Of a stretch of 64,000 nucleotides of DNA, positions 1-26,128 are shown one piece after another. Made by a program: the position numbers and the translations under genes. Source of the DNA: Macrostomum lignano (lineage: Eukaryota); NCBI GenBank assembly GCA_002269645.1, contig NIVC01002355.1, positions 93,152 through 157,151 of the forward strand, read 5' to 3'. The notes under the pieces are model-generated. The model had not been told where the DNA came from and made no database searches. It saw nothing but the letters and a program-made list of their open reading frames with translations. Within the stretch, counting starts at the first letter, position 1. Each line of letters begins with the position of its first letter.

Positions 1-75
1 CTTAGCCAACAGGGCCAAAAGCAGCAAGAGGGAAGGCACAGGCGTGGCGACAAAGTCAGCGGACGAAACGAGTCC
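1..75 (-). repeat. Split direct repeat B2
   Basis: Matches 407-481 with one mismatch (caaagtcagc vs caaaggcagc). Confidence 0.95.
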
Positions 76-170
76 TGCGATAGCGAATATATTTTAGGAT
101 TTGAGGCGATTAAAAGGGAAGTCACGAAGCAACGGAATAAAAGCATTACAAGAAAATTAATAAAAAAAAT

Positions 171-407
171 TTTACGAGCCAAAGCGCTCTCGCAGCGCGC
201 ACGAGAGAGCGTGAGCGCACAAATAAAAGGGGGCCGACGCCGCCCACCCCCAACCCAACACCCCCGCCTGCCGGCCGGCACCCAGCACCCCACCTTGCGG
301 CAGGGATGCACACGCGCGGGCCGCACGCACAGACGGGCGGAGGGGGCGGCACCGTCGGCTAAACACGATTACAGAGCCGGTTAAAACCGGCCCCTGAAAT
401 CGCAACC
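171..407 (-). repeat. Split direct repeat A2
   Basis: 237 bp matching 4257-4493 with one mismatch seen (ggcaccgtc vs ggccccgtc). Confidence 0.95.
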
Positions 408-481
408 TTAGCCAACAGGGCCAAAAGCAGCAAGAGGGAAGGCACAGGCGTGGCGACAAAGGCAGCGGACGAAACGAGTCC
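407..481 (-). repeat. Split direct repeat B1
   Basis: Copy of 1-75; directly abuts A2 at cgcaacc/ttagcc. Confidence 0.95.
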
Positions 482-505
482 AAAAATCCCAAACCAGGGA
501 GGAGG

Positions 506-1534
506 TCACGTTGAGGGGAGGAGTGAAGCCAGGCGCAGCGGCGCACCGCGCTCAACCGAAGGCGGTAGGTACCGCTCTACAGCGCTGCTTGCCCAGTCAC
601 CGACTCGCATGATTGAATCGATGGGGATGCCGGCCTCCGCCGCGGATGTAGCGCCACCTCGACGCAACGAGTGCCCAGAGAACCTGGCTGGCTCGGCGAA
701 CCCGGCCTGTCGAAGTGCCGCGGACAGGCGCCTCGCGAAGGTGCGCGCGGTGAGCGGTGCGGTGGACCGTCTGTTTCGGGTACTGAACAAGTGATGCTGG
801 GCGTCCTGCGGTCGGTTAATGCGCAGCTGCTTCTGGAGCGCGGTGACCGGGCAGAGTGGATGTCCGTCTGGGAGCTGCGGCAAGAAAACTCGGTGCTGGC
901 GCGCCCCGAACTGGTTGGTCTTTGACCTCGGAATGACGAGGATGACGCCCGCCCTTGACGGCCGGATGCAGCTCGCACTGAGGTCTCGCTGCGGATCGAA
1001 CCGGCCGGATACGCACAGGTTGGCTCGCCGCAGCATGGCCCACCAGCCCACGATGCAGGCGCACCAGAATGCGCAGTCCCTGGGCTCTTCAGGTCGCAGC
1101 ACGCCGTGCAGCCGCTGCAGGTCGGCCGGCCGCAACGCTCGTTTGCTCCTTGGGGCGGCGCCGAGGAGCCGGCGGGCGCCGCGCAGGGCCAGCTGAACCA
1201 GTGGCTGCCTCATCGGGTCAGCCACGCTGTTTGATTTGTAGAGCCAGGACACGGCGGCGAGGTGGCAGGATAGGCTGCTGACTGAGAACAGCCGGTTGTT
1301 CGCCAGCTCCGCCAGGTAGTTGCACACGTCGGCGGGCTGCGCTGACAGCGGTTGAAGTCTGTGGGCGGCGCAGAATCGCATCCAGGACGTGCACTGGCTG
1401 GCGTAGGCGGAGCGAGTTGAGCTGGCGAAGCCTTGGCTGAGCAGTCGACGTGCCGGTGCGGAGAGGCCGGGAACCGGGACCACAGGAGGCGGACCTGAAA
1501 CAGAAGGTGGGAGGCAGCGGCAGAGCTCAAGCAA
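506..1534 (-). CDS. Tyrosine recombinase (YR) of the retroelement
   Basis: 342-aa open frame with an N-terminal SAM-like segment (STRSAY...WMRFC) and the catalytic R-K-H-R-W-Y set: LRRAN, SKTNQ, HSLRRGGA, GDW, ERY. Confidence 0.95.
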   Translation of the reverse strand: MLELCRCLPPSVSGPPPVVPVPGLSAPARRLLSQGFASSTRSAYASQCTSWMRFCAAHRLQPLSAQPADVCNYLAELANNRLFSVSSLSCHLAAVSWLYKSNSVADPMRQPLVQLALRGARRLLGAAPRSKRALRPADLQRLHGVLRPEEPRDCAFWCACIVGWWAMLRRANLCVSGRFDPQRDLSASCIRPSRAGVILVIPRSKTNQFGARQHRVFLPQLPDGHPLCPVTALQKQLRINRPQDAQHHLFSTRNRRSTAPLTARTFARRLSAALRQAGFAEPARFSGHSLRRGGATSAAEAGIPIDSIMRVGDWASSAVERYLPPSVERGAPLRLASLLPST

Positions 1535-1619
1535 GCGGAGGCAAGCAAGCTGGTTGGCACATAGCAGGTGCCATAGAAGCGAAACAGAAAGTTGGCAAGC
1601 TGGCTGGGGTCATGCGCTC

Positions 1620-1986
1620 TGGACAGCGGGTCTGCGAGCAGCTGGAAGCGGCCAGGCACATGGTGCGCGCGGACGATGATGTCGCGTTGAATGCAGGTCA
1701 GGGCGACGCGCTTCTGCAGGTCGGCAATACCTTGGTGCTTGGCGGAACCCGAGTTAATGATGCCGCAGGCGGCGGTGCTGTCAGTGTAGACTGCAACCGA
1801 GCAGCCGCTGAAGGCTTCTTGGTGCTGCAGAATCGCAACCAGCGGGGCGGCGCACTCCTTGAGGTTGATGTGCAGCTCCTTGAACGCGCCATCACAGTCG
1901 GACTGCCAGTCGATGTAGAGCCAAACCGGTTCTCTGTCGACGAAATGCAGCACAGCACCGCCTCCAATGTCAGGCGTCAGACTCAA
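1620..1986 (-). CDS. RNase H domain of pol, frameshifted relative to RT in this copy
   Basis: Motifs ESDA/xxGGGA (split by an indel at about 1970), HINLKE, YTDS and HVPG...ADPLSR. Confidence 0.85.
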
Positions 1987-3211
1987 TCGCTCCAGCCGGC
2001 CGACGCGAGGGCCAGGCAGCTCTAGGCGGCAGCGTGCTCAACGCGGTCATCCACCACCTCAGCTGCAACTGGAGCTCCTCCGTGACGCCGACCCTGTCGG
2101 ACGGATGCGCCAGGCTGTTGACCAGCTCGATCAGCGGCCGCAGGAAAGTTCGCCCGTGCTGGGCGGCAGTGCACAAGTGGCTGAGGTGTCCGAGCAGCTT
2201 CTGCAGTTCCGCCTTGCACAGGCTCCTCCGCGAGAGGCAGGTGTCAAGAAGCTGAAGCTTTTCGGCTTTGTCGGCTGGGAAGGAAAGACTGGCTTGCACG
2301 GTGTCGATGTCAATGCCGAGGAATCGCAGCTTTGTCGTCGGCGGCACCGACTTTTTCTCGTTGATGGTGAAGCCAAGCCTGGTGAGCAGGTTGCGCAGCT
2401 CGTGGTAGGCCCTGTCACACTCGGCTTTCGTCCTGGCCATGACGAGGAAGTCATCGATGAAAACGACGGTTGCCAGGAACCCCTTGCGACACATCATTCG
2501 CCGGGCCGCTTGCGTGAGGCGATGGAAAATGCTGACGGAGGCTCTGCTGCCGAATGGTAACCGCGTATCCACCAGGAAGGTTGAGCAGCCATTGCCGAAG
2601 TCCCAGTGGATGCCGGTGGCTTGGTAGCACTGCGGAGAAATTGGCACGCTGCGGTAGGCTGACGCGATGTCCACCTTTGCCATAAACCAGCCGGGCTGCA
2701 TCATCCTGACGGCCTCGTCGACGGAGGTGAAGCGGAGACGCCGTTGTTGGGCATAGTGATCGTTCAGGCTGCAGCCGCGAGGGACGGAGCAATCATGGAT
2801 TAGCCGGATGCCGGAGCTGTCTTTCGGAATGGCTCCCAGCGGACAGACCATCGCAGGCTTGTCCACGACTGGGACGTACCTCCCGAGCCGGATTTCTTCT
2901 CCGATAACAGCTTGGACTTGGTCGCGATTCCGGTTGACGGACTGGTAGTTGCTGCAGAGACACGGCGTAAAGTCGAAGTCATCGACAATGGAGAAGCCGC
3001 TCTCGATGCCGTCGAGAATAAAATCAGCGTCGGGGTCGCCCACAAGCTCGGAGCGCCAGGCGTCGATGCAGAGATCGCCCACTGGCTGCGTCAGATCGGA
3101 CATCCGCACTGGAGGCTTGACGATGCAGGGCACGGGAGCGGGCTGAGCGAGGCAGTTAAAAGCAGGAGGGGTAAAATCGGTTTCGCGCGCCGTGTCGGCG
3201 CGCTTGCTCAG
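1970..3211 (-). CDS. Reverse transcriptase (pol) of the retroelement
   Basis: Motifs PLGAIPK...RLIHDCS, KVDIASAYRSVPI, LPFG, FIDD (2462-2451) and FLGIDID. The frame is open from 3244 to the TGA at 1972-1970. Confidence 0.95.
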   Translation of the reverse strand: MSKRADTARETDFTPPAFNCLAQPAPVPCIVKPPVRMSDLTQPVGDLCIDAWRSELVGDPDADFILDGIESGFSIVDDFDFTPCLCSNYQSVNRNRDQVQAVIGEEIRLGRYVPVVDKPAMVCPLGAIPKDSSGIRLIHDCSVPRGCSLNDHYAQQRRLRFTSVDEAVRMMQPGWFMAKVDIASAYRSVPISPQCYQATGIHWDFGNGCSTFLVDTRLPFGSRASVSIFHRLTQAARRMMCRKGFLATVVFIDDFLVMARTKAECDRAYHELRNLLTRLGFTINEKKSVPPTTKLRFLGIDIDTVQASLSFPADKAEKLQLLDTCLSRRSLCKAELQKLLGHLSHLCTAAQHGRTFLRPLIELVNSLAHPSDRVGVTEELQLQLRWWMTALSTLPPRAAWPSRRPAGAIESDA

Positions 3212-3217
3212 TTTTTT
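3185..3217 (-). promoter_or_regulatory. Candidate -1 programmed ribosomal frameshift signal at the gag/pol junction
   Basis: Minus strand reads gcA AAA AAC TGA GCAA GCGCGCCG ACA CGGCGCGC. Slippery heptamer in the ORF1 frame at 3217-3211, 7-nt spacer, perfect 8-bp GC stem. A -1 shift enters the RT frame with no stop. Confidence 0.75.
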
Positions 3218-4225
3218 GCGTGATTTTGCTCGGAGTGGCTGCCCTCACAGATTCGGCAGGCATGGAGGAATCGGCAGTTGCTCCTCATGCAGCCGTTGGT
3301 GCTGTTGAAGGACAAGCACAGCTCGCGGCCTGAGGATGTCCGCGGACCCATGACGCGGCTCTTGTTGCTAGGCTGGTTTCGCTTGGCTGTCTGATTGTAC
3401 TGGTCCGTCTTAATGCTGAGCAGGTGCCTGATCGACATCTGGGCGCAGTCTTTGCCCCAGCGAAGGCTGTTGGCTGCGCGGTGCTGGCGGTAGTCATGGT
3501 CGAATCTGATGAATCTGGTGCGCTGGGAATCTGTCGAATAGCTCGGCCACCTGGACATTGTACTGGGCGTAATCTTTGACTTGCTCAGTTGTGCTGTACA
3601 CTTGGCCCTTACTGGTCACCTGCGGCGCTGTGTCTTCAAGTATCTGAAGCAGGACCTTCATACTGCCGGCGAACCACTGCCCAATTGTCATGCCGTCCAG
3701 CTTGGTCGTCGACTTCTTGAGCACGAGGCCGCCAGAGCTGCCCCTGGTGAGCAGCTCGTCAGCCTGGCCTGACAGATCATTGACAAAGTCTCTGACGAGT
3801 AGACACGGCTGCCCGACCGGCCGGGGGTTGGCTCTAGCGCTGACGGGGCCTGTTGGGTTGATAAGTTCAGCGAAAAGATTCTGCTGCTCACCTGATTCTG
3901 TACGAGCAGTCACGACGGCGCGTTCACGAAGCTCTCGCTCGCGTGTTTGAAGCTCTAGGAGCTGCAGCCGTTTCTGCGCCCGCCGAATCTCGCCGTCCAG
4001 GTCCGCCTCCCGTGGGTCCCGGCCTTGGTCTTGGAGCTCCTCCTGCGCACAGGGCGATGCCGATGCCGATGTCAATGCCGATGTCCCGCCGTCTTGAAGC
4101 TGTGACTGCCCCTCGTGTTGTCTCAGTCTGGCTTGCAAGGCCGACTTATTGCCTGCGGTTGAGAGGCCTCAGCTACCCAGCTCACTCTTGAGTTGTTTGA
4201 CTGTTAGTCGGTCCACACGATGCAT
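3208..4225 (-). pseudogene. Gag-like ORF1 with N-terminal SAP motif and C-terminal Cys/His knuckle; one nonsense codon and one frameshift
   Basis: ATG at 4225 reads MHRVDRLTVKQLKSELGS*GLSTAGNKSALQARLRQHE (TGA at 4171-4169). A 1-nt frameshift near 3510 precedes RFDHDYRQHRAANSLRWG. The C-terminus is CLSFNSTNGCMRSNCRFLHACRICEGSH. Confidence 0.85.
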
Positions 4226-4493
4226 GATAGACAGAGCCAGAAAGTCGCAAAAAAAATTTACGAGCCAAAGCGCTCTCGCAGCGCGCACGAGAGAGCGTGA
4301 GCGCACAAATAAAAGGGGGCCGACGCCGCCCACCCCCAACCCAACACCCCCGCCTGCCGGCCGGCACCCAGCACCCCACCTTGCGGCAGGGATGCACACG
4401 CGCGGGCCGCACGCACAGACGGGCGGAGGGGGCGGCCCCGTCGGCTAAACACGATTACAGAGCCGGTTAAAACCGGCCCCTGAAATCGCAACC

Positions 4494-4700
4494 ATCAAGT
4501 ACGTCACCATCTACAACAGGCAGGACTGCTGCGCTTAGCGGCTCAACCACTTCTCACTGCAGGTGGACGACGTTGAGTGCAACCGAGTAAACCTGACGAA
4601 GCCGTTCTCCGTGGCCAACTTCAGCTGCAACGCCTTCGGCAGCATGGTCCGCGTGCAAAACTTGCAGGCTACATTTCTTAACGATTTGAGGGTTTGAAAT
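4494..4700 (+). pseudogene. F-type lectin (fucolectin) domain, 3' half; disrupted by the retroelement and a stop codon
   Basis: Reads IKYVTIYNRQDCCA*RLNHFSLQVDDVECNRVNLTKPFSVANFSCNAFGS, paralogous to 7069-7463. TAG at 4536-4538 where the paralog has TAC. Confidence 0.88.
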
Positions 4701-5972
4701 TTAGGACTAGAGCATGCAAATGTCGTCACCAACAATTAAACTTACTGAACAAAATAATTTGAAATACATGTAGTAATGTCCGATTTTATTATAATCCTAT
4801 GTCGTTGTCACATAGAGATTCCAATTTCTTAACGTTAACGTAAATGCGCTTTAACGAGTCACTACCTGAAGCGAACAAAAGTTACAAGAGTATGTTTTAA
4901 AAAATAAATATTTTTGGTCACTTACCTTGAAACTCGGGGGTAAGCAAACAATTTTAAATTAAGGGCCAGATACAGAATCCAGCTCATGACTGCAGACCAG
5001 AGAGAAGAGAAAAAGAAGAGAGGGTAAAGTGGGGAGATGAGAGAGGAGACGGGAGAGGAGGGAAGAGAAGAGAGAGGGGAGATGGGATATGAGAAAACAG
5101 AGGGAGAAAAGGAGACAGCTAAGAACAGACACAAGACTTGAGCGGACCCGAATCGCTATTGTGAAGTTTTAAAGTGCTGTGGCTATAAGCCAAGCCGAAC
5201 CATAAACAAAATGGTTTGCCTCCCAGCGCACCGTACGCTTTAGCAATCTACGTGTAACGAGAGCAAGCTAGGCTTGCAGAAATAAATATATAATGAGACA
5301 AGAGTCGAAGATCGGCTGGTTTTAATTTAGTCTTAAGTTCGTGACTTGTTCCTTTGACTTGTCATAAAAACAAAAGACACAACACAAAGGACCCGAGGGC
5401 CGTATAGAGAGGCTTCGTGGCCGCAGGCCGAAGCTTGCCGGCCGACCCCTGTTTTAAAACAAAGCTTCTAAAATTCTAAAGTGCAAGCATGAAACCAAGA
5501 AAAAATTTGGAAATATATAATTTACTATGTTACAACAGCCTCTGCAGAGAGTACTTGAATCGTCGGACTGATTCATAATGAGATTTATTCGGAATAGGAA
5601 GATGTTATTTTTGTTTAAATACCGTTAATAAGTTAAAAACGAAGGATTTAGAATACTGCATATAGCTTGTTTGGAAAGAAGACTATGACCATGGTAAAAA
5701 GCCAGTCGAAAAAATTTTATCATGATTAGTTACTGCAAGTAGAAAAGTAATGTATTAACATGCATTCATAGTGGCCAATCAAAATCCAAGGTCATCCAAG
5801 CAAATGTAAAGCGTTCAAACTTTATCAATTATAAAGGCAGAGATCAGAAACAGACGGAATATTCAGGCTTTTTCAGGAATCTACAACTGAAATTATTCAT
5901 AAAACCGAAGTTGACTAAGTGGTTAATCATGCGAAATAAAGTTATAATACTTCTATTCCTTTCTGCCAGTAG

Positions 5973-7463
5973 AATCACCATGGCAACCATTGCTACTATA
6001 CCTATTTAATCGTTAAATCCAGCAGCCCAGTTGCTCCCCCATCGATGGAGGAGGTGGTGCAGGACGAAAACCCGCTGTTTTGCGCTAGAAAATGCACGAA
6101 TCAAGTGTTGGGCTGCTTCGGCTTCAGCTGGATCCAGGGACTGTGTCAGTTCTTCAATCTCTCCGCGTTTTATAATTCGACTTGGGACAAGTGTGATGCT
6201 GTTGACTGCAAATTCGATGTTTACAAGAGACATTTCGGTGAGCTTTGATCAAAATAATGACACGAATATAGACAATTGGAGTAGCAACAGTAGACAAATT
6301 GGCCGCGGCCCCCAAAAAAATTGCGCTACACGAAAACCTCCAAAAACTGCATGATAAGGCCCACCACGCAAGCTCGACGAATCGCAGTGCCTACACTTTT
6401 GTTACTTTTTGGACATGGCATCAACCGGTCTAAAAGACAGGCTTGTGGCACTTACCAAGAGCCAGGGACACCCACCAAGAGACAGGGGGCTCTCACTAAG
6501 AGACAGGGGCGCTCACCAACGTTCTGCCAGAATGTCTTGTTTTTCAATAAGCGCCCATGTGTTCCATACACCTAGTGTACCAATCAGCACTATGCCTCAG
6601 TGCGGTCTTGTCAAGCTTTCAAATTTCATTAGCACGCCGATCTCTGACTTTGGCAGCCACTGCCAGCAGCCTTATCCAAATCTTCAAAAAATAGCACCAG
6701 GGTGCTATGGACACCGACCTGCTGTGGACTATGGCACAGATGAAGCCTCGACAGTGTGCAAATCTCAACTGCGAGTTGCTTTCAACAGTTTCTTAAGTAC
6801 TCAGTCATCACCCCGACGCCGTCGGCACCTTCTGCAGGTAGCCGTCTTGGCAAAATCATTGACTATCTGAACGTTCCAGATAGCTAGCGACATCAAGTTG
6901 CTCCTTTGCTCCGTTCAGGAGCAGCAAAACTTTTCTAGAGAGGGGGGGGCGAATTTTACTTTGTATAAAAAACGCGGCTTTTTTTTGTACTTTTACTGTT
7001 AAAAACTGTGTAAATAACTCCTAAATCTCATGATGGCTAAAATAATCAATCCCGCTATCAAATCTTAGAACCGCGTCGTTTGAACACTTCAAACTGCGAG
7101 CAGAGCAGCCTGATTCACGATGGCGTCTGCACTCGAGCTATAGACGGCAACACTGGCCAAGATTACACCACGGGATCCTGCTCCCACACTGAATACGGCT
7201 ACGGCCAGTGGTGGATAACACAAATTTCTGCTTCTGCTCTTGTTTCCTACGTCACCATCTACAACAGACAGGACTGTTGCGCCTACCGGCTGAGAAAATT
7301 CTCGCTGCAGGTGGACGGAGTCGAATGCAACCGAGTGAACCTGACGGAGCCGTTCTCTCTAGCCAACTTCAGCTGCAACGCCTTCGGCAGCCGAGTTCAG
7401 GTGCAGAGCCTTCTGCCATATGCTCTTACAATCTGTGAAATAGAGATTTATGGGATTGTGTGA
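5973..7463 (+). CDS. PAN/apple plus F-type lectin domain protein (two exons seen, 5' end uncertain)
   Basis: Exon about 5973-6237 (FCARKCTNQVLGCFGFSWIQGLC, PAN-like Cys spacing, donor gtgagc, phase 1) joins in frame to exon 7069-7463. That exon has the exact fucose-binding motif H-x26-R-x-D-x4-R (H...RQDCCAYR) and ends CEIEIYG. Confidence 0.8.
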
Positions 7464-14067: not shown

Positions 14068-17000
14068 ATGTCTCAGCATGGCTCTGACAAGACTGACGAC
14101 CTGCTAGAAGGTCTGGACCCCCTGCTGGCACAAAGTGCCCAGCTGACAGAGCGCAGTGAGGCAGCATTGAGCGACTTCAGCACTGTGTCCCGCCTGCCAG
14201 CTGTCATTGACGATGTACAACCATCCACCTCGTCGATGAGGCCCCCGCCATCCCTGTCACTGTCGGGCAAGCCTCCGCTGTACACTTCCTCGGCCTCGAC
14301 TTCCGGTTTTGTGTCGTCCAGTTCTGCCATGGCGGGTTCCCGAAGTCACACAGTCAGGGCCGGTGCTCTGTACCATGATGGAGTGCTGTCTTCCTATGGT
14401 GCTGCCAATGGGACCTCTGGCATGTAGGTCCTTGGAATCAATGCTGTTAAAATGGTAGAACGCAAATTTTTATTGAAAATTTTCAATAATAAACTTAAAA
14501 TCTTCAGAACTTCGTCCGCTGGTCCACTGACAAGTTCAACTGGTACTTCAACCACTGCTGCCGCAGCCATGGCCATGTATAGGAGTAGCAGCGCTTCTCG
14601 GCTGATGGACGGCAGAAACAGTTTGTGAGGCTCGAATTGGAATTCTGCTTAACTTTTTAATTCTTGTTTTCACTAGATTAGCAATCCACTCTGTTTCAAT
14701 TGATCTGTGATTAGCTAGATTAGCAATCCATTCTATTCCAATTGATCTGTGATTGGCTAGATTAGCAATCCATTCTATTCCAATTGATCTGTGATTGTCT
14801 AGATTAGCAGTCCATTCTATTCTAATTGATCTGTGATTGGCTAGATTAGCAATCCATTCTATTCTAATTGATCTGTGATTGGCTAGATTAGCAATCCATT
14901 CTATTCCAATTGATTTGTGATTGGCTAGATTAGCAATCCATTCTATTCCAATTGATCTGTGATTGGCTAGATTAGCAATCCATTCTATTCCAATTGATCT
15001 GTGATTGTCTAAATTAGCAGTCCATTCTATTCCAATTGATCTGTGATTGGCTAGATTAGCAATCCATTCTATTCCAATTGATCTGTGATTGGCTAGATTA
15101 GCAATCCATTCTATTCCAATTGATCTGTGATTGGCTAGATTAGCAATCCATTCTATTCCAATTGATTTGTGATTGGCTAGATTAGCAATCCATTCTATTC
15201 CAATTGATCTGTGATTGTCTAGATTAGCAATCCATTCTATTCCAATTGATCTGTGATTGTCTAGATTAGCAATCCATTCTATTCCAATTGATCTGTGATT
15301 GGCTAGATTAGCAATCCATTCTATTCCAATTGATCTGTGATTGACTAGATTAGCAATCCATTCTATTCCAATTGATGTGTGATTGGCTAGATTAGCAATC
15401 CATTCTATTCCAATTGATCTGTGACTGGCTAGATTAGCAATCCATTCTATTCCAATTGATTTGTGATTGGCTAGATTAGCAATCCATTCTATTCCAATTG
15501 ATCAGTGATTGGCTAGATTAGCAATCCATTCTATTCCAATTGATCTGTGATTAACTAGATTAGCAATCCACTCTCTTTCAATTGATTTGTGATTGGCTAG
15601 ATTAGCAATCCATTCTATTCCAATTGATTTGTGATTGGCTAGATTAGCAATCCATTCTATTCCAATTGATCTGTGATTGTCTAGATTAGCAATCCATTCT
15701 ATTCCAATTGATCTGTGATTGTCTAGATTAGCAATCCATTCTATTCCAATTGATCTGTGATTGGCTAGATTAGCAATCCATTCTATTCCAATTGATCTGT
15801 GATTGACTAGATTAGCAATCCATTCTATTCCAATTGATGTGTGATTGGCTAGATTAGCAATCCATTCTATTCCAATTGATCTGTGACTGGCTAGATTAGC
15901 AATCCATTCTATTCCAATTGATTTGTGATTGGCTAGATTAGCAATCCATTCTATTCCAATTGATCAGTGATTGGCTAGATTAGCAATCCATTCTATTCCA
16001 ATTGATCTGTGATTAACTAGATTAGCAATCCACTCTCTTTCAATTGATTTGTGATTGGCTAGATTAGCAATCCATTCTATTCCAATTGATCTGTGATTAA
16101 CTAGATTAGCAATCCATTCTATTCCAATTGATCTGTGATTGACTAGATTAGCAATCCATTCTATTCCAATTGATGTGTGATTGGCTAGATTAGCAATTCA
16201 TTCTATTCCAATTGATCTGTGATTGGCTAGATTAGCAATCCATTCTATTCCAATTGATCTGTGATTGACTAGATTAGCAATCCATTCTATTCCAATTGAT
16301 GTGTGATTGGCTAGATTAGCAATCCATTCTATTCCAATTGATCTGTGACTGGCTAGATTAGCAATCCATTCTATTCCAATTGATCTGTGATTGTCTAGAT
16401 TAGCAATGCATTCTATTCCAATTGATCTGTGATTGGCTAGATTAGCAATCCATTCTATTCCAATTGATCTGTGATTTGGCTAGATTAGCAATTCATTCTA
16501 TTCCAATTGATCTGTGATTGTCTAGATTAGCAATCCATTCTATTCCAGTTGATCCGTGATTGGCTAGATTAGCAATCCATTCTATTCCAGTTGATCTGTG
16601 ATTGGCTAGATTAGCAATCCATTCTATTCCAATTGATCTGTGATTGGCTAGATTAGCAATGCATTCTATTCCAATTGATCTGTGATTGGCTAGATTAGCA
16701 ATCCATTCTATTCCAATTGATCTGTGATTGGCTAGATTAGCAATTCATTCTATTCCAATTGATTTGTGATTGGCTAGATTAGCAACCCATTCTATTCCAA
16801 TTGATCTGTGATTGTCTAGATTAGCAGTCCATTCTATTCCAATTGATCTGTGATTGACTAGATTAGCAATCCATTCTATTCCAATTGATGTGTGATTGGC
16901 TAGATTAGCAATCCATTCTATTATAATTGATCTGTGACTGGCTAGATTAGCAATCCATTCTATTCCAATTGATCTGTGATTGTCTAGATTAGCAATGCAT

Positions 17001-20000
17001 TCTATTCCAATTGATCTGTGATTGGCTAGATTAGCAATCCATTCTATTCCAATTGATCTGTGATTTGGCTAGATTAGCAATTCATTCTATTCCAATTGAT
17101 CTGTGATTGTCTAGATTAGCAATCCATTCTATTCCAGTTGATCCGTGATTGGCTAGATTAGCAATCCATTCTATTCCAGTTGATCTGTGATTGGCTAGAT
17201 TAGCAATCCATTCTATTCCAATTGATCTGTGATTGGCTATATTAGCAATGCATTCTATTCCAATTGATCTGTGATTGGCTAGATTAGCAATCCATTCTAT
17301 TCCAATTGATCTGTGATTGGCTAGATTAGCAATTCATTCTATTCCAATTGATTTGTGATTGGCTAGATTAGCAACCCATTCTATTCCAATTGATCTGTGA
17401 TTGTCTAGATTAGCAGTCCATTCTATTCCAATTGATCTGTGATTGTCTAGATTAGAAATCCATTCTATTCCAGTTGATCCGTGATTGGCAAGATTAGCAA
17501 TCCATTCTATTCCAGTTGATTTGTGATTGGCTAGATTAGCAATCCATTCTATTCCAATTGATTTGTGATTGGCTAGATTAGCAATGCATTCTATTCCAAT
17601 TGATCTGTGATTGGCTAGATTAGCAATCCATTCTATTCCAATTGATCTGTGATTGGCTAGATTAGCAATCCATTCTATTCCAATTGATTTGTGATTGGCC
17701 AGATTAGCAATCCATTCCATTCCAATTGATCTGTGATTGGCTAGATTAGCAATCCATTCTATTCCAATTGATTTGTGATTGGCCAGATTAGCAATCCATT
17801 CCATAATACAGCTACAACGTCAATTACTATTTCACTATTCTCTCCAGCAACTCCAACGGTGTCTCCAGTCAGCTCAGCAGTCATTACACGGGCCAGTCGC
17901 AGCAGGCGGCAACATCAAAGTACCACCATCAGCAGCATCAGCAGCCTTACAGTGGGGCTTCATCACTTACTCGGCCACCAGCGATGCAAACGCAGCCTTC
18001 GTCATCATATTACCAGTCAGCTCATCATGTACAGCAGCAGCAGCAGCCTTCAATAGAAAGGTGAGCTCTGGAGGTGTGGGAGGAATTCCGTGTGGTTTAA
18101 ATATTGAAGTTCACATTTTCAAGGAGTGGTTTACCATATGCAAGCGATACAGTACTTATTAATGCGACTATTGGGGCTTGGCCGTTGGCTCGTTAAAAAT
18201 GTTACAAACAGCTTACTGATTCATCAAGTGACGCAGATGCGCTTTAGACCCTACGGCCCCTATAAAAGCGTCACTAATTCGTCTAATTGACTCATAAGAG
18301 CAATTATTTGACGACTCTAAGACATTCACCAAGGTATCGTTTTCATCTGTTCTCAGATCCGGCATCTCGTCAGTTGGCGGCAACAGCGCTGGCGGGCAGA
18401 CGGCCATCAGTGTGGAGACCATCGAGCGAGTCAGACGAAGTTTGCATCGTCGGTTGAGCGGCGGCGGTGGCGGCAGCAGCGAGGCCGGAGCTGGAGCCGC
18501 AGGCGCTGATGCAGAATTGACCAGCTCCACCCAGAACGGTCACGCAGCCGACCGAGCTGAAGGCGTTCGTCAGGCTTTCGAGTTGCAGTTGAATCGGCTG
18601 AAATCTGAGCTCGATGAAGAGCGTCGGAAGCGGCAGGAGTGCGAGACTCAGCTGCGGTCCAAGCAGCAGGAGGCCTTCAAAAAGGACCAGGAGCTGACAG
18701 GTCTCAGGGCGGCCTGCGAGAGAAAAGATCAGACTGTGAGTTGGGTGAAGGCGTGAGACTTGCATGATCTTGTATGTTGAGTTAATTGGGCTGAATCTGC
18801 TAGCTAAATCTACCAGCTAAATCTACCAGCTGAAGCTACCAGCTGAATCTACCAGCTGAAGCTACCAGCTGAATCTACCAGCTAAAGCTACCAGCTAAAG
18901 CTACCAGCTGAAGCTAACAGCTGAATCTACTGGTCAGCTAAAGCTACCAGCTAAAGCTACCAGCTGAAGCTACCAGCTGAATCTACCAGCTGAAGCTACC
19001 AGCTGAATCTACCAGCTAAAGCTACCAGCTAAAGCTACCAGCTGAAGCTAACAGCTGAATCTACTGGTCAGCTAAAGCTACCAGCTAAAGCTACCAGCTG
19101 AAGCTACCAGCTGAAGCTACCAGCTGAATCTACCAGCTGAAGCTACCAGCTGAATCTACCAGCTAAAGCTACCAGCTAAAGCTACCAGCTGAAGCTAACA
19201 GCTGAATCTACTGGTCAGCTAAAGCTACCAGCTAAAGCTACCAGCTGAAGCTAATAGCTGAAGCTACCAGCTGAATCTACCAGCTGAAGCTACCAGCTGA
19301 AGGTACCAGCTGAAGGTACCAGCTGAAGCTACCAGCTAAAGCTACCAGCTAAATCTACCAACTGAATCTACCAACTGAATCTACCAGCTGAAGCTACCAG
19401 CTGAAGCTACCAGCTGAATCTACCAACTGAATCTACCAACTGAATCTACCAGCTGAAGCTACCAGCTGAAGGTACCAGCTGAAGCTACCAGCTAAAGCTA
19501 CCAGCCTCAACTAATCCGCTGCTTTTGGGGCCGACTCCAACGGCAGTAGCTATATAGCTATATTCGCTTCTTAACTTGTAACCAAGTTTGTCTTTAGAGT
19601 TGTAGGTGAAAATCTGTCAATAATTTCGAGAATTCAAACGCACTTTTTCCTTTTTTATTATTTCTTCAATAGTCGTGCATGCAGTAATATCTTGTTTCGT
19701 AAGCTAGTAAGTAGTATATGCGAAAATTTTCTCACTTGTTAGTAATCAGTTATTATTAGTTAGAAGTTTCACTTGCTATTATGACTGAAAATTGTGTATA
19801 CAATCTCGAGTCACACTTAAGCTTCTTACGGTGTTCTTTCATTCTCATTCAATTTGAACGTCAATCATTCTAAGGATACCCCTCACTTTTTCTAAGAAAT
19901 GCCCCCCCAATAATTTTCAGAGTGGATCCTGTAGCTTTCTAAGAAATGTTTCTAGGAATAGGCTTTTGAGATGGGGCGGAGAAATGAAAATTTTTCTGGC

Positions 20001-23000: not shown

Positions 23001-26000
23001 TCAGCGCAAGCAGAGATTCGAGGCCTGCGGGAGCGCTGGGCGAAGGAGAAGGAGACGCTGAGACGGCGGTTCGAGGAAGAGCTGGATGCCAGGTGACTAG
23101 TGATAGCGGCGCTAGATTGATCAGAGTAGGGCTAGATTGATCAGATATGCGTTAGATTGATTGGGGTGGCGCTAGATTGATATGGGTGGCGCTAGATTGA
23201 TTTGAGTGGCGCTAGAGATGATTGGAGTGGCGCTAGATTGATTAGAGTGGCGCTAGGTTGATTGGAGTTGCGCTAGGTTGATATGAGTGGCGCTAGATTG
23301 ATACGGGTGGCGCTAGGTTGATATGGGTGGCGCTAGGTTGATATGGGTGGCGCTAGGTTGATATGGGTGGCGCTAGATTGGTACGGGTGGCGCTAGGTTA
23401 ATATGGGTTGCGCTAGGTTGATATGGGTGGCGCTAGGTTGATATGGGTGGCGCTAGATTGATACGGGTGGCGCTAGATTGATATGGGTTGCGCTAGATTG
23501 ATTAGAGTGGCGCTAGGTTGATACGGGTGGCGCTAGATTGGTACGGGTGGCGCTAGATTGATACGGGTGGCGCTAGATTGGTACGGGTGGCGCTAGATTG
23601 GTACGGGTGGCGCTAGATTGGTACGGGTGGCGCTAGATTGATATGGGTTGCGCTAGGTTGATTAGAGTGGCGCTAGGTTTATATGGGTGGCGCTAGGTTG
23701 ACTAGATTAGATTAGTTAAATTAAAATGGCGCCAATTAGGCCGCATAGAATTTAGAATAGAACTCACTGACCAGCTTCAACTCTCCCCAGATGCGCCGAG
23801 ATGGAAGGGCGACTTCGGTCGGCGCGCGAAGAGAACGAAGAGCTGTCTAGGCGGTGCGAGCACTGGAAGGAGCAGAAGCGGCATGCGGACCAGCAGCGAC
23901 TCCGAATGGCCGGTCTGGTGCAGTCGGTAATGCAGGGCCAGTGCAACGACGCTCTGAGCATTCTCAGCGGTGGTGGCGGCGGCGTCGGTGGTGCCGGAAG
24001 CGATGTCGGTACGGGCCAGCAGCCCATGTCGGCGAGATCAAACGTCACCCAGGATTCGGTCGGTTCCGCTGGTGACGGCTCGGTGAGAATCGAACTTCGA
24101 CGTGGACCCCAGCTCGAGGCCGATAAACCGTACGAAGCGTCTTCTTCGGCCGTTCAAAACTATGACTCATCTGACGGTCATACTGGTCATGTGTATGACT
24201 CATCTGCCGGTCATACTGGTCATGCGTATGACTCATCTGCCGGTCGTACTGGTCATGCGTATGACTTATCTACTCGTCATACTGGTAATGCGTATGACTC
24301 ATCTGCCAGTCATACTGGTCATGTGTATGACTCATCTGCCGGTCGTACTGGTCATGCGTATGACTTATCTACTCGTCATACTGGTAATGCGTATGACTCA
24401 TCTGCCAGTCATACTGGTCATGCGTATGACTCATCTGCCGGTCATACTGGTCATGCGTTTGACTCATCTGCCGGTCATACTGGTAATGCGTATGACTCAT
24501 CTGCCGGTCATACTGGTCATGCGTATGACTCATCTGCCGGTCATACTGGTCATGCGTATGACTCATCTGCCGGTCATACTGGTCATGCGTATGACTCATC
24601 TGCCGGTCATACTGGTCATGCGTATGCCTCATCGAACCGTCATAGCAATCACGCGTATGACAACCAACTAGTTAATTATGACGGTCAGGCCAATGACTTA
24701 TTAGCTGGTCAAAGAAGCATTGCATCCGCTGGTCAAAGAGCTCATGCATATGACGCATCATCTGGTCGCGCGGCTCAGGCGTATGACTCACTAACTCGTC
24801 ATACATATGACTCATCCGTGAATCGCGCTTCCTTTGACTCGCATTCGCATGACTCACCTCGATCAGGAAAAGGTCATCAGCCAGTTTCTGACTCATTAGG
24901 GACCAGAGGGCCCTCCGCCACCGCCAGTCATGGTCACGGATCGCCCGCTAGAAAGCCGAAGTCAGATTTGGCTGCAGCCTATGACTCATCACCTCTGCAT
25001 GGAGTCTCGTCCTCTGACGTTATCGATGAGTCATTCAGGCCCGCCGCCATCGGCAGAGAAGCCACTGCTGGGTCCGTGGTTTTGTCAGCTGAAAGTCGAA
25101 CCAACAACCAACCGTTGACGCAAAACAGCAGTTCTTCCTATGACTCATCAATGAGTCACGTCGCTAATAAGTACGAATTGACGATGAAAAACTCCAGCAA
25201 ACAAGTTTATGACTCACCAGGCGCTCATGCCAGCAAGTATGACTTTCCGATGACCGCTAAAGCTAGCAATCAGACCTATGACTCATCAGGGGCTCATGCA
25301 AGCTTCCATGACCCTCAAATGACCGCTAAAGCCAGCAATCAGACCTATGACTCATCTGCAGCTCATGCCAGCAAGTATAACCCTCAGACGACCGCCAAAC
25401 CCAGCAACCAGGTCTATGACTCACCAGGGGCTCATGCCAGCAAGTATGACCTTCCGATGACCACTAAAGCCAGCAATCAGTACTATGACTCATCTGCAGC
25501 TCATGCCAGATTCAATGACACTCCGATGAGTACCATAGCTAGCAACCAGACCTATGACTCATTGCTGACTCACACCTCTAACAGTTATGACCCACCGATG
25601 ACCAAAGCCAGCAGTAGTAGCTATGCCTATGACTCATCGGTGACAGCTCACGTAGCCAGCAAGTATGACCCACCAGCGACCCGAGCGGATGACTTGTTGA
25701 TGACCCGCACAGATGCCCAGCAGGCGTATGACTCATATTTAGCCAAGACTCAGACAGCTGCTAGCAGCGGAGCAGCAGTGCCTCGTCTCGATCTGGGACT
25801 TGATCGGCAGGAGGACAACAAAACTGACCAACATCCGGGTGATGATGACCTTGACAATGCTGACGGATATGGTGTGGCGCAGCAGCAGCACCAGAGGCTG
25901 CCGCAGCTGGACCCAATTCTCGAAGCGGACACGCCCAGAACAGACACGGCCAGATCAGTCAAGCAGCTTATTGATCTTCCGTCTCCTCGTGCTGCTGCTG

Positions 26001-26128
26001 CTGCTGCTGAACCGGCACCACCTTTTCATCAGCTGATGCGCTCGGTGGCCGAAGCACTCGGCGATGGCGAAGCTCCAGACGGAGCGGGCGACGGTCTGGA
26101 AGACGCAAATTCTGATAGAAGTTTTTAA
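14068..26128 (+). CDS. CNTROB: Centrobin-like centriolar coiled-coil protein, 7 exons, 1413 aa
   Basis: Exons 14068-14423, 14508-14624, 17848-18060, 18357-18735, 21738-22268, 22785-23092 and 23791-26128; all GT-AG, phase-consistent, 4242 nt. The coiled coil ERRKRQECETQL...AACERKDQTIRQLEDSTEKLNENWRRRDAER and the segment QRLRMAGLVQSVMQGQCNDALSILS resemble vertebrate centrobin as I recall it (not searched). The gene model is more secure than the name. Confidence 0.7.
14673..17802. repeat. 42-bp satellite filling intron 2 (about 74 units)
   Basis: Unit gattagcaatccattctattccaattgatctgtgattggcta. Confidence 0.97.
18790..19503. repeat. 13-bp minisatellite (ctaccagctgaag) in intron 4
   Basis: Direct reading; gaag/gaat/aaag variants. 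Confidence 0.95.
21045..21588. repeat. 22-bp minisatellite (tttctaagaatttctcagatgc) in intron 4
   Basis: Direct reading. Confidence 0.93.
22285..22690. repeat. 30-bp minisatellite (gaatgggatttttgaaatctcaaagtttga) in intron 5
   Basis: Direct reading; 10-aa periodic pseudo-ORFs. Confidence 0.95.
23110..23705. repeat. 20-bp minisatellite (gcgctagattgatatgggtg) in intron 6
   Basis: Direct reading. Confidence 0.95.
24161..24627 (+). repeat. Coding 33-bp repeat (YDSSAGHTGHA)n in the last centrobin-like exon
   Basis: About 14 in-frame units. A diverged 23-aa YDS repeat follows at about 25200-25660. Confidence 0.92.

What the first reader, a model, noticed from the sequence alone, without database searches (positions are those of the whole stretch)
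3185..3247. Canonical -1 ribosomal frameshift signal joining gag and pol in a Ngaro-type YR retrotransposon
Seen: on the minus strand ORF1 ends ...cac gcA AAA AAC TGA. The heptamer A_AAA_AAC (3217-3211) is in the correct X_XXY_YYZ phase directly before the ORF1 stop. It is followed by a 7-nt spacer (TGAGCAA) and a perfect all-GC hairpin GCGCGCCG-ACA-CGGCGCGC (3203-3185). The -1 frame is the RT frame, has no stop down to the RT motifs, and is closed upstream by a TGA at 3247-3245, so gag and pol overlap by only about 12 codons with no AUG in the overlap. Established: A_AAA_AAC plus a downstream structure at 5-9 nt is the retroviral gag-pro type signal (MMTV, HTLV). Inference: this element makes a Gag-Pol fusion by -1 frameshifting. 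I know this mode from retroviruses and LTR elements but not as a described feature of DIRS/Ngaro elements, where Dictyostelium DIRS-1 is reported to use splicing. Caveat: an in-frame AUG at 3103 offers an alternative start.
Basis: partly seen in the sequence, partly recalled or inferred. Interest (0 to 1): 0.92.

Follow-up and report, generated by a model that had tools for sequence, protein, structure and literature searches.

The report
Frameshift signal joining gag-pol, Ngaro retrotransposon
A dead copy of a Ngaro-type tyrosine-recombinase retrotransposon still carries, at the end of its gag gene, a textbook "slippery" sequence (A_AAA_AAC) plus a GC hairpin; the same heptamer sits at the same place in 19 very distant relatives, so this group of mobile elements most likely makes its Gag-Pol fusion by -1 ribosomal frameshifting, as retroviruses do.

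Summary

The element (1-4493, minus) has gag, RT/RNase H and a tyrosine recombinase, no methyltransferase, and split direct repeats. That is the Ngaro architecture. This copy is dead: gag has one stop and one frameshift, and pol has one frameshift.

The comparison is decisive for the heptamer:
- Of 31 loci with a -1 gag/pol overlap, the window included, 20 have exactly A_AAA_AAC in gag phase, 0-21 nt before the gag stop.
- All seven positions are invariant, although flanks are unconserved and RT identity has a median of 48%.
- Controls are clean: 0/19 in-frame-stop relatives, 0/9 "+1" relatives, 0/25 pol/YR overlaps.
- 18 of 22 -1 loci have no pol-frame AUG.

The hairpin is not conserved in relatives and cannot be tested by covariation, because no close relatives were found.

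Relatives use two other recoding-type junctions: UGA-C/UAG-G in-frame stops, and a clade with the influenza PA-X-type UUU_CGU +1 motif.

Verdict: a canonical -1 PRF signal, a known mechanism. I found no description of it for Ngaro elements in the searchable literature. Interest is moderate.

The parts
1..4493 (-). Whole Ngaro-type YR retrotransposon copy (A1 - gag - pol - YR - B1 - A2 - spacer - B2); 60-63% G+C against about 43% in the surrounding DNA. Its 3' end coincides with window base 1.
   Evidence: Composition. ORFs. Pfam. Repeats.
4243..4493 (-). 5' terminal repeat A1 (about 250 nt), 99% identical to A2
   Evidence: the repeat finder family D1. Alignment.
3208..4225 (-). gag, broken by one in-frame stop and one frameshift. 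N-terminal SAP-like motif; C-terminal CCCH plus C-C-H-H zinc knuckles; ends x-K-N-stop as in relatives.
   Evidence: SAP half-match, E 2.4e-4. The gag C-terminus matches 17 relatives' gag at E 1e-4 to 1e-12.
3245..3247 (-). TGA that closes the pol (-1) frame upstream; it defines the 37-nt gag/pol overlap (3244-3208)
3211..3217 (-). Slippery heptamer A_AAA_AAC in gag phase: the proposed -1 shift site
   Evidence: Only occurrence in the element. Invariant in 20 loci.
3208..3210 (-). gag stop codon UGA, directly 3' of the heptamer (as in 6 of the 19 relatives with this heptamer)
3204..3210 (-). 7-nt spacer UGAGCAA between heptamer and hairpin
3185..3203 (-). Perfect 8-bp all-GC hairpin with ACA loop: the proposed frameshift stimulator of this lineage
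   Evidence: unique in the window; dG -15.3, z -3.7.
3101..3103 (-). First pol-frame AUG: the alternative start considered and judged unlikely
   Evidence: 10 AUG triplets lie upstream of it in the element.
1210..3244 (-). pol (RT + RNase H), broken by one frameshift; open from 3244, no own start needed if fused to gag
   Evidence: Pfam RVT_1; relatives' single 540-610-aa pol ORFs align in two frames here.
506..1534 (-). Tyrosine recombinase ORF (intact, 342 codons); overlaps the end of pol in its -1 frame; no slippery heptamer in that overlap
   Evidence: Pfam Phage_integrase + SAM-like..
407..481 (-). Repeat B1 (75 nt), directly 5' of A2
157..407 (-). Repeat A2
1..75 (-). Repeat B2 (99% identical to B1); separated from A2 by an unmatched AT-rich 81 nt (76-156); ends at the window edge

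Best explanation
The feature is the gag/pol recoding signal of a Ngaro-type tyrosine-recombinase retrotransposon.

Proposed mechanism in intact members of the family:
- Ribosomes translating gag reach A_AAA_AAC with tRNA-Lys on AAA in the P site and tRNA-Asn on AAC in the A site.
- A fraction slip one base back, re-pairing on AAA and AAA, and continue in the pol frame instead of stopping at the UGA that follows.
- The result is a minor Gag-RT/RNase H fusion beside the major Gag product.
- In this lineage the slip is probably promoted by the 8-bp GC hairpin 7 nt downstream, which would sit at the mRNA entrance channel when the heptamer is being decoded.
- The element encodes no protease, so the fusion would probably act uncleaved, with its Gag part bringing the polymerase into the particle or RNP.

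Shown: the anatomy; the phase; the nucleotide-level conservation of the heptamer in distant relatives; the lack of a pol start codon in most of them.
Inferred: that slippage occurs, its efficiency, the role of the hairpin, and the fate of the fusion.

The copy in the window is itself inactive: gag has one stop and one frameshift, and pol has one frameshift.
For: - Anatomy at exact canonical geometry.
- The heptamer occurs once in the element. The hairpin is the only perfect one of 8 bp or more on that strand in 5.5 kb.
- Of 31 loci with a -1 gag/pol overlap, 23 have an in-phase canonical X_XXY_YYZ. Twenty have exactly A_AAA_AAC, 0-21 nt before the gag stop.
- Aligned on the heptamer, information is 2.0 bits at all 7 positions, 1.7 bits at the base before, and 0-0.7 bits in the flanks. 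RT identity among these loci has a median of 48%, minimum 40%.
- The residue before Lys-Asn varies (P/S/A/T), but its third codon base is always A. Lys is always AAA and Asn always AAC. This is selection on nucleotides, not on the protein.
- The variants in one subclade are G_GGA_AAC and G_GGU_UUU. [quoted passage not shown]
- Negative controls: 0/19 in-frame-stop loci and 0/9 '+1' loci have AAAAAAC near the gag end. Twenty-five pol/YR -1 overlaps hold one canonical heptamer and no AAAAAAC.
- 18 of 22 -1 loci have no pol-frame AUG between the heptamer and the first conserved pol motif.
- The gag terminus (zinc knuckles, then x-K-N-stop) matches the relatives, so the frame change here is the family's architecture and not a third random break.
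Against: - No measurement of any kind: no expression, profiling or protein data.
- The downstream hairpin is not conserved. In 27 relatives' -1 sites the 45-nt downstream window ranks at the median (0.53) of local windows (KS p 0.63). Only 4 loci, the window's among them, are in the top ~7%.
- In this G+C-rich element 6.6% of local windows are as stable as the hairpin window.
- Covariation cannot be tested: the nearest RT is 48% identical, and there are no close copies in the window or the collections.
- The window's element is one of the 4 of 22 that do have a pol-frame AUG (3103). Its heptamer-to-RT distance (53 codons) is longer than in relatives (14-33).
- The copy is dead.
Confidence: 0.82

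Rival explanations
1. Pol is made on its own, by initiation at the pol-frame AUG 3103-3101. This could be by leaky scanning, reinitiation, an internal entry site, or a spliced or subgenomic mRNA. The heptamer and hairpin would then be irrelevant.
For: The AUG exists, and all conserved pol motifs lie downstream of it. tblastn matches of relatives start near or after it. The expression route of the YR ORF, which overlaps pol without any slippery site, shows that these elements have some other way to express a downstream ORF.
Against: 18 of 22 relatives with a -1 overlap have no such AUG. Ten AUG triplets precede it in the element. This reading does not explain why seven nucleotides are invariant in phase at the gag end in 20 loci with a median 48% RT identity.
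Confidence: 0.07
2. The A6 run is a transcriptional (RNA polymerase II) or reverse-transcriptase slippage site. Addition of one A in a fraction of transcripts puts pol in frame with gag, as potyviruses do at GAAAAAA.
For: A run of six A is the conserved core. Insertion of one base would give the same fusion frame. Slippage at A-runs is a known route (PMC5009743 and PMC7618844, listed).
Against: Slippage by a polymerase does not depend on codon phase. Yet all 20 A6C runs are in the one phase needed for tandem tRNA re-pairing, and none of the other -1 loci has an out-of-phase A6. The 3' C is invariant, giving the shifty A-site codon AAC. Sister lineages carry G_GGA_AAC and G_GGU_UUU, which are ribosomal shift sites without a long homopolymer. 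From general knowledge, six A is short for pol II slippage.
Confidence: 0.05
3. The -1 relation of gag and pol in this copy is just one more decay mutation in a dead element. The heptamer and hairpin are a coincidence.
For: The copy has three other disabling changes. The element is G+C-rich, so stable local folds are common.
Against: The gag terminus (x-K-N-stop on A_AAA_AAC) is the same as in 19 relatives, 6 of which also have the stop directly after the heptamer. The chance of AAAAAAC in phase in a 37-nt overlap is about 6e-4 (arithmetic on uniform composition). The only perfect 8-bp hairpin in 5.5 kb lies 7 nt after it.
Confidence: 0.03

Closest known systems
Retroviral gag-pro / gag-pol -1 frameshift signals that use A_AAA_AAC (MMTV gag-pro, HTLV gag-pro; named from general knowledge). 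PMC5009743 lists A_AAA_AAC among the shiftiest heptamers.
   Same: The same heptamer in the same phase at the end of gag. A 5-9-nt spacer. A downstream G+C-rich structure. The product is a Gag-enzyme fusion made at a fixed low ratio.
   Different: The host element is a tyrosine-recombinase retrotransposon with no protease and no DDE integrase, so the fusion would not be processed by an element protease. The stimulator here is a simple 8-bp hairpin, not a pseudoknot. In relatives no conserved structure is detectable.
Hairpin-stimulated -1 PRF: HIV-1 gag-pol, human astrovirus ORF1a/1b with A_AAA_AAC plus stem-loop (general knowledge). Stem-loops can replace pseudoknots (PMC3203594, listed).
   Same: A simple G+C-rich stem-loop a few nucleotides 3' of the heptamer, rather than a pseudoknot.
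   Different: The stem is shorter (8 bp, 3-nt loop, dG about -15 to -17 kcal/mol) than the stems of 10-12 bp usually needed for high efficiency. Its efficiency is unknown.
Uncleaved Gag-Pol fusions of totiviruses such as yeast L-A virus (general knowledge)
   Same: -1 PRF yields a Gag-polymerase fusion that is not cut, because no protease is encoded. The Gag part would carry the polymerase into the particle.
   Different: That is an RNA virus with an RdRp, with no homology to this element. For Ngaro elements, particles and the fate of the fusion have not been studied in anything I could read.
Ngaro / Ngaro-like YR retrotransposons as described (PMC3783388, PMC3266345, PMC9210276, PMC8547959)
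   Same: Gene order gag - RT/RH - YR. No methyltransferase. Split direct repeats A1...B1-A2-B2. Overlapping ORFs, as reported for Xenopus Ngaro-like families.
   Different: None of these papers names a recoding signal. [quoted passage not shown] The window's RT is a long lone branch, at most 48% identical to anything found. There is no SGNH-hydrolase ORF.
UUU_CGN +1 frameshift motif of influenza A PA-X and plant amalgaviruses (PMC5052127). This concerns the relatives, not the window.
   Same: Nine relatives forming one RT clade have CGU_UUU_CGU in gag phase inside a +1 gag/pol overlap.
   Different: The window's element uses the -1 signal instead. The +1 motif has not, to my knowledge, been reported in a retroelement.

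Membership tests
Ngaro-type YR retrotransposon | Reverse transcriptase + RNase H pol | tested here: met
   RVT_1, E 9.6e-17. The RNase H part aligns to the C-terminal third of relatives' single RT/RH ORFs, some of which carry PF17917.
Ngaro-type YR retrotransposon | Tyrosine recombinase ORF downstream of pol | tested here: met
   Phage_integrase, E 7.7e-9, plus SAM-like N-terminal domain in 509-1534(-).
Ngaro-type YR retrotransposon | No methyltransferase domain (separates it from DIRS1-like and PAT-like), no protease, no DDE integrase | tested here: met
   No such Pfam hit in any ORF piece. The end of pol overlaps the YR ORF, which leaves no room for a further domain. Criteria from PMC3266345 and PMC3783388.
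Ngaro-type YR retrotransposon | Split direct repeats A1 ... B1-A2-B2 | tested here: met
   A1 4243-4493 = A2 157-407 (99%). B1 407-481 = B2 1-75 (99%). B1 abuts A2. Deviations: an unmatched 81 nt lies between A2 and B2, and B2 ends at the window edge.
Ngaro-type YR retrotransposon | RT/YR phylogeny clusters with reference Ngaro elements | not testable with these tools
   No named reference Ngaro sequence is held. Relatives found are unnamed. Their shared architecture (gag - RT/RH - YR) is the only link.
Canonical eukaryotic -1 programmed ribosomal frameshift signal | X_XXY_YYZ heptamer in the phase of the upstream frame, inside the overlap | tested here: met
   A_AAA_AAC at 3217-3211, in phase.
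Canonical eukaryotic -1 programmed ribosomal frameshift signal | Stable RNA structure starting 5-9 nt downstream | tested here: met
   8-bp GC hairpin after a 7-nt spacer, dG -15.3. Not conserved in relatives, so it is met for this element only.
Canonical eukaryotic -1 programmed ribosomal frameshift signal | Conservation of the shift site among relatives beyond what coding explains | tested here: met
   20 loci; 2.0 bits at each of 7 positions against 0-0.7 in flanks; synonymous alternatives never used; clean negative controls.
Canonical eukaryotic -1 programmed ribosomal frameshift signal | Downstream ORF lacks its own start | tested here: inconclusive
   The window has a pol-frame AUG at 3103. 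18 of 22 relatives have none.
Canonical eukaryotic -1 programmed ribosomal frameshift signal | Covariation supporting the stimulatory structure | not testable with these tools
   No sequence close enough to align at the nucleotide level.
Canonical eukaryotic -1 programmed ribosomal frameshift signal | Observed transframe product or footprint phase change | not testable with these tools
   No expression, profiling or proteomic data are available here.

The most novel reading that the evidence does not exclude
Ngaro-like tyrosine-recombinase retrotransposons as a group express Pol only as a Gag fusion by translational recoding, and different lineages have swapped the device:
- -1 frameshifting at A_AAA_AAC (or G_GGA_AAC / G_GGU_UUU), often with no detectable downstream RNA structure and in one clade with a C-rich tract instead;
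- leaky UGA-C / UAG-G in-frame stops;
- in one clade, the UUU_CGU +1 shift motif otherwise known from influenza A PA-X and amalgaviruses.
The last would be the first such site in a retroelement. None of this appears in the open literature I could search.
Probability: 0.5. Interest if true: 0.7.

Novelty: new member of a known kind. Interest (0 to 1): 0.55.

Why it matters
How YR retrotransposons express their overlapping ORFs is left open in the papers I could read. [quoted passage not shown]

A conserved A_AAA_AAC in phase at the gag end gives a concrete, testable answer for gag/pol. It puts Ngaro elements beside retroviruses, LTR elements and totiviruses in setting a Gag:Gag-Pol ratio by recoding, in this case without a protease to separate the two.

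It also helps annotation. Gene callers split these elements into separate "uncharacterized" ORFs starting at arbitrary AUGs.

The family-wide picture of three alternative recoding devices on one RT tree would be a compact natural example of recoding signals replacing one another.

For this window alone the finding is a relic signal in a dead copy, and the mechanism is textbook.

Tried and rejected
- Close copies of the family, to test hairpin covariation. None found: the best RT hit among 5.8 billion proteins is 48% identical. There was nothing in genome contigs or viral contigs and no second copy in the window by blastn or tblastn.
- Conserved downstream structure in relatives. Constrained MFE folds against shuffles gave a mean z of -0.6, with 1 of 27 below -2. 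The rank against local windows had a median of 0.53. I rejected a shared stimulatory structure.
- Rfam. No family in the window at gathering score, and only a chance miRNA hit (E 1.2) near the site.
- First whole-window repeat search. It was swamped by satellites and told nothing about the element. I redid it on 1-6500.
- Literature. Goodwin & Poulter 2004 is not held. Searches of Ngaro with frameshift, slippery, readthrough and frameshifting found nothing relevant. The 2016 recoding review does not mention DIRS or Ngaro in the part held.
It was not found in the DIRS-1 paper read, where splicing refers to an artificial marker intron.
- Host identification. It got only as far as a weak NIDO-domain hit, which suggests an animal.
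- Chance frame break, own AUG, and transcriptional slippage. I considered each and judged it unlikely (see rivals).

Disclosure: notebook entry 1, written before I applied the operators' rule on break positions, repeats ORF-piece bounds as printed by the ORF listing. Entries cannot be edited. The report does not repeat them.
Full report
**1. What is in the sequence**

On the minus strand the text reads ...cac gcA AAA AAC TGA gcaa GCGCGCCG aca CGGCGCGC.
- The heptamer AAAAAAC is at 3217-3211.
- The gag-frame stop TGA is at 3210-3208, so the heptamer is in the phase A_AAA_AAC.
- The spacer to the first paired base is 7 nt (3210-3204).
- The hairpin has eight G-C or C-G pairs (3203-3196 with 3192-3185) and a 3-nt loop.
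- The reading frame that holds the reverse transcriptase is the -1 frame. It is closed upstream by TGA 3247-3245 and open from 3244 into the RVT_1 domain.
- The overlap is 37 nt and contains no pol-frame AUG.
- The first pol-frame AUG is at 3103-3101.

**2. Is it more than chance?**

- AAAAAAC occurs once in the element.
- The hairpin is the only perfect hairpin of 8 bp or more on that strand in 5.5 kb, and the only all-GC one in the 64-kb window.
- The hairpin alone folds at -15.3 kcal/mol (z -3.7). The 86-nt context folds at -25.6 (z -3.5).
- The element is 60-63% G+C, so 6.6% of local 45-nt windows fold as stably.

What is unlikely is the placement: the only heptamer, in phase, in a 37-nt overlap, followed at 7 nt by the only perfect hairpin.

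**3. The element**

The window's first 4.5 kb, on the minus strand, is a YR retrotransposon. Its parts, in order, are:
- a 5' repeat A1 (4243-4493);
- gag (3208-4225);
- pol with RT and RNase H (1210-3244);
- a tyrosine recombinase ORF (506-1534; Phage_integrase and SAM-like domains);
- repeat B1 (407-481), abutting A2 (157-407);
- 81 unmatched AT-rich bases;
- B2 (1-75), ending at the window edge.

A1/A2 and B1/B2 are each 99% identical. There is no methyltransferase, protease or DDE integrase, and there is no room for one.

By the criteria given in PMC3266345, PMC3783388 and PMC9210276, this is the Ngaro architecture. I could not place the RT against a named reference Ngaro, because none is held.

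The copy is dead:
- gag carries one in-frame stop and one frameshift;
- pol carries one frameshift, since relatives' single 540-610-aa pol ORFs align to it in two frames;
- the YR ORF is intact.

Given the 99% identical repeats, the copy is young. Some of these breaks could even be assembly errors.

**4. Relatives**

The RT translation finds 581 proteins. The best is only 44-48% identical. The named ones come from hemichordates, a flatworm, corals and a hydrozoan, and they are typically 530-560-aa RT/RH ORFs.

I fetched DNA for 4 of them and for 80 metagenomic loci. For every locus I asked how the long ORF upstream of pol relates to the pol frame. Three classes appear:
- a -1 overlap: about 30 loci, and the window;
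- a single in-frame stop: 19 loci;
- a +1 overlap: 9 loci.

**5. The heptamer is conserved; its flanks are not**

- Of 31 -1 loci, 23 have an in-phase canonical X_XXY_YYZ inside the overlap.
- Twenty have exactly A_AAA_AAC, 0-21 nt before the gag stop. In 7 of those the stop follows directly, as in the window.
- Aligned on the heptamer, all seven columns carry 2.0 bits and the preceding base 1.7 bits (C in 19 of 20). The 18 columns before and the 24 after carry 0-0.7 bits.
- The RT of these loci has a median identity of 48%, minimum 40%.
- In the gag frame the site reads x-Lys-Asn. The residue x varies (P, S, A, T), but its third base is always A. Lys is always AAA and Asn always AAC. That is selection on the RNA.
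- One subclade has G_GGA_AAC, G_GGU_UUU, G_GGA_AAA or near-canonical G_GAA_AAC instead. [quoted passage not shown]
- On an RT tree the A_AAA_AAC loci are spread over several deep branches. The window's element is a long lone branch.

**6. Controls**

- None of the 19 in-frame-stop loci and none of the 9 '+1' loci has AAAAAAC near the end of gag, although their gag ends with the same zinc-knuckle region.
- The pol/YR junction of the same elements is also an overlap, in the -1 frame in 25 loci. It holds one canonical heptamer in all and no AAAAAAC.

The heptamer is therefore specific to -1 gag/pol junctions.

**7. Rival readings**

(a) Own start at AUG 3103.
- 18 of 22 -1 relatives have no pol-frame AUG between the heptamer and the first conserved pol motif.
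- In the window ten AUG triplets precede it.
- The window is, however, one of the four loci that do have such an AUG. For this element alone the point is not settled.

(b) Polymerase slippage on the A-run.
- That process is blind to codon phase, yet 20 of 20 runs are in the one phase that allows tandem tRNA re-pairing.
- The 3' C is invariant.
- Sister lineages use heptamers without a long homopolymer.

(c) A random break in a dead copy.
- The gag terminus is the family's own: zinc knuckles, then x-K-N-stop.

**8. The hairpin**

This is the weaker half of the claim.
- In 27 -1 sites of relatives, the region downstream is no more structured than shuffles (mean z -0.6) or than neighbouring windows (median rank 0.53, KS p 0.63).
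- Only the window, L005, L013 and L072 have a markedly stable fold starting 6-9 nt after the heptamer.
- No relative is close enough to align at the nucleotide level, so covariation cannot be tested.

I take the hairpin as the likely stimulator in this lineage, at about 0.6. The grounds are its geometry (7-nt spacer), its perfection and its uniqueness. It is inferred, not shown.

**9. How it most likely works**

- Shown: anatomy, phase, nucleotide-level conservation, and the absence of a pol start in most relatives.
- Inferred: a fraction of ribosomes slip -1 on A_AAA_AAC and bypass the adjacent UGA. They make a Gag-RT/RNase H fusion. Because no protease is encoded, that fusion probably acts uncleaved, with its Gag part bringing the polymerase to the particle or RNP, as in totivirus Gag-Pol (general knowledge).
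- How the YR ORF is expressed remains open.

**10. Comparison with what is known, and novelty**

The mechanism is the textbook retroviral one. In the open literature I could search, no paper links Ngaro or DIRS elements with frameshifting, slippery sites or readthrough. The large 2016 recoding review does not mention them in the part held. The original Ngaro papers are not held, so a prior remark there cannot be excluded.

I rate it a new member of a known kind, with interest 0.55.

**11. Seen in the relatives**

- In-frame-stop class. The stop is UGA-C in 14 of 19 loci (UGA CUA in 5 of those), UAG-G in 4, and UGA-A in 1. From general knowledge, these are the classical leaky contexts.
- '+1' class. 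All nine loci form one RT clade. All have CGU_UUU_CGU in gag phase inside the overlap, 6-45 nt before the gag stop. TTTCGT is absent from the last 120 nt of gag in 45 loci of the other classes. UUU_CGN is the +1 shift motif of influenza A PA-X and plant amalgaviruses (PMC5052127).

If these readings hold, one retroelement group uses three interchangeable recoding devices at the same junction.

Noticed in passing
Relatives L010, L016, L017, L024, L030, L035, L036, L038, L053 (gag/pol overlaps): All nine loci whose pol is in the +1 frame form one RT clade. All carry CC(N)_CGU_UUU_CGU in gag phase inside the overlap, 6-45 nt before the gag stop. This is the UUU_CGN +1 frameshift motif of influenza A PA-X and amalgaviruses. 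It is absent from 45 loci of the other classes.
   Followed up: partly
Relatives L002, L003, L004, L006, L007, L011, L019, L020, L021, L026, L028, L031, L034, L039, L041, L046, L054, L059, L079: In these loci gag and pol are in the same frame, separated by one stop. The stop is UGA-C in 14 (UGA CUA in 5), UAG-G in 4 and UGA-A in 1. These are the contexts known for stop-codon readthrough.
   Followed up: partly
Relatives L001, L037, L043, L044, L051, L061, L065, L074, L075, L078 (4-30 nt after the -1 site): A C-rich tract (at least 7 C in 9 nt) follows the shift site in 10 of 27 loci, against 0.67 expected. Eight of the ten are one clade. It may simply encode Pro-Pro in the pol frame, or it may be a structure-independent (protein-binding) stimulator. 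Unexplained.
   Followed up: partly
Window 506-1534(-) against the end of pol; relatives: The YR ORF overlaps the end of pol. It is in the -1 frame in 25 loci, +1 in 20, and in-frame in 3. There is practically no slippery heptamer, and often no early AUG. How the recombinase is expressed is not explained by the gag/pol signal.
   Followed up: partly
Window 4225-4110(-), N-terminus of gag: The gag N-terminus looks like a SAP (DNA-binding) motif. Pfam SAP matches its second half at E 2.4e-4. It is interrupted in this copy. The relatives' gag proteins scanned did not show it.
   Followed up: partly
20 loci aligned on the heptamer: The base before the heptamer is C in 19 of 20 loci (1.7 bits), so the conserved unit is really C-A_AAA_AAC. 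This could be an E-site or upstream-context effect, or a preference for small NCA-coded residues.
   Followed up: no
Window 1-156: Repeat B2 ends exactly at window base 1, so the element's 3' junction with host DNA is not visible. An unmatched AT-rich 81 nt (76-156) separates A2 from B2, which the textbook B1-A2-B2 layout does not have.
   Followed up: no
Window 50914-54915 and 33098-33399: A 4-kb pure (AGTC)n microsatellite (about 1000 units, 99% matches) and a 300-bp one of the same unit. The long one creates a spurious 1461-codon ORF.
   Followed up: no
Window 14673-17801 and many others (12-63 kb): A 42-nt satellite of 74.5 copies (94% matches), plus more than fifteen other minisatellite arrays with periods of 13-231 nt. 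The region is very repeat-rich.
   Followed up: no
Window 23801-26128(+): A 775-codon ATG ORF with internal 33-nt and 69-nt tandem repeats and no Pfam match. It could be a repetitive host protein or a chance frame through a minisatellite.
   Followed up: no
Window 35609-36307(-): An ORF with a weak NIDO (nidogen-like) domain match (E 3e-4, below the curated cut-off). This is the only hint that the host is an animal.
   Followed up: no
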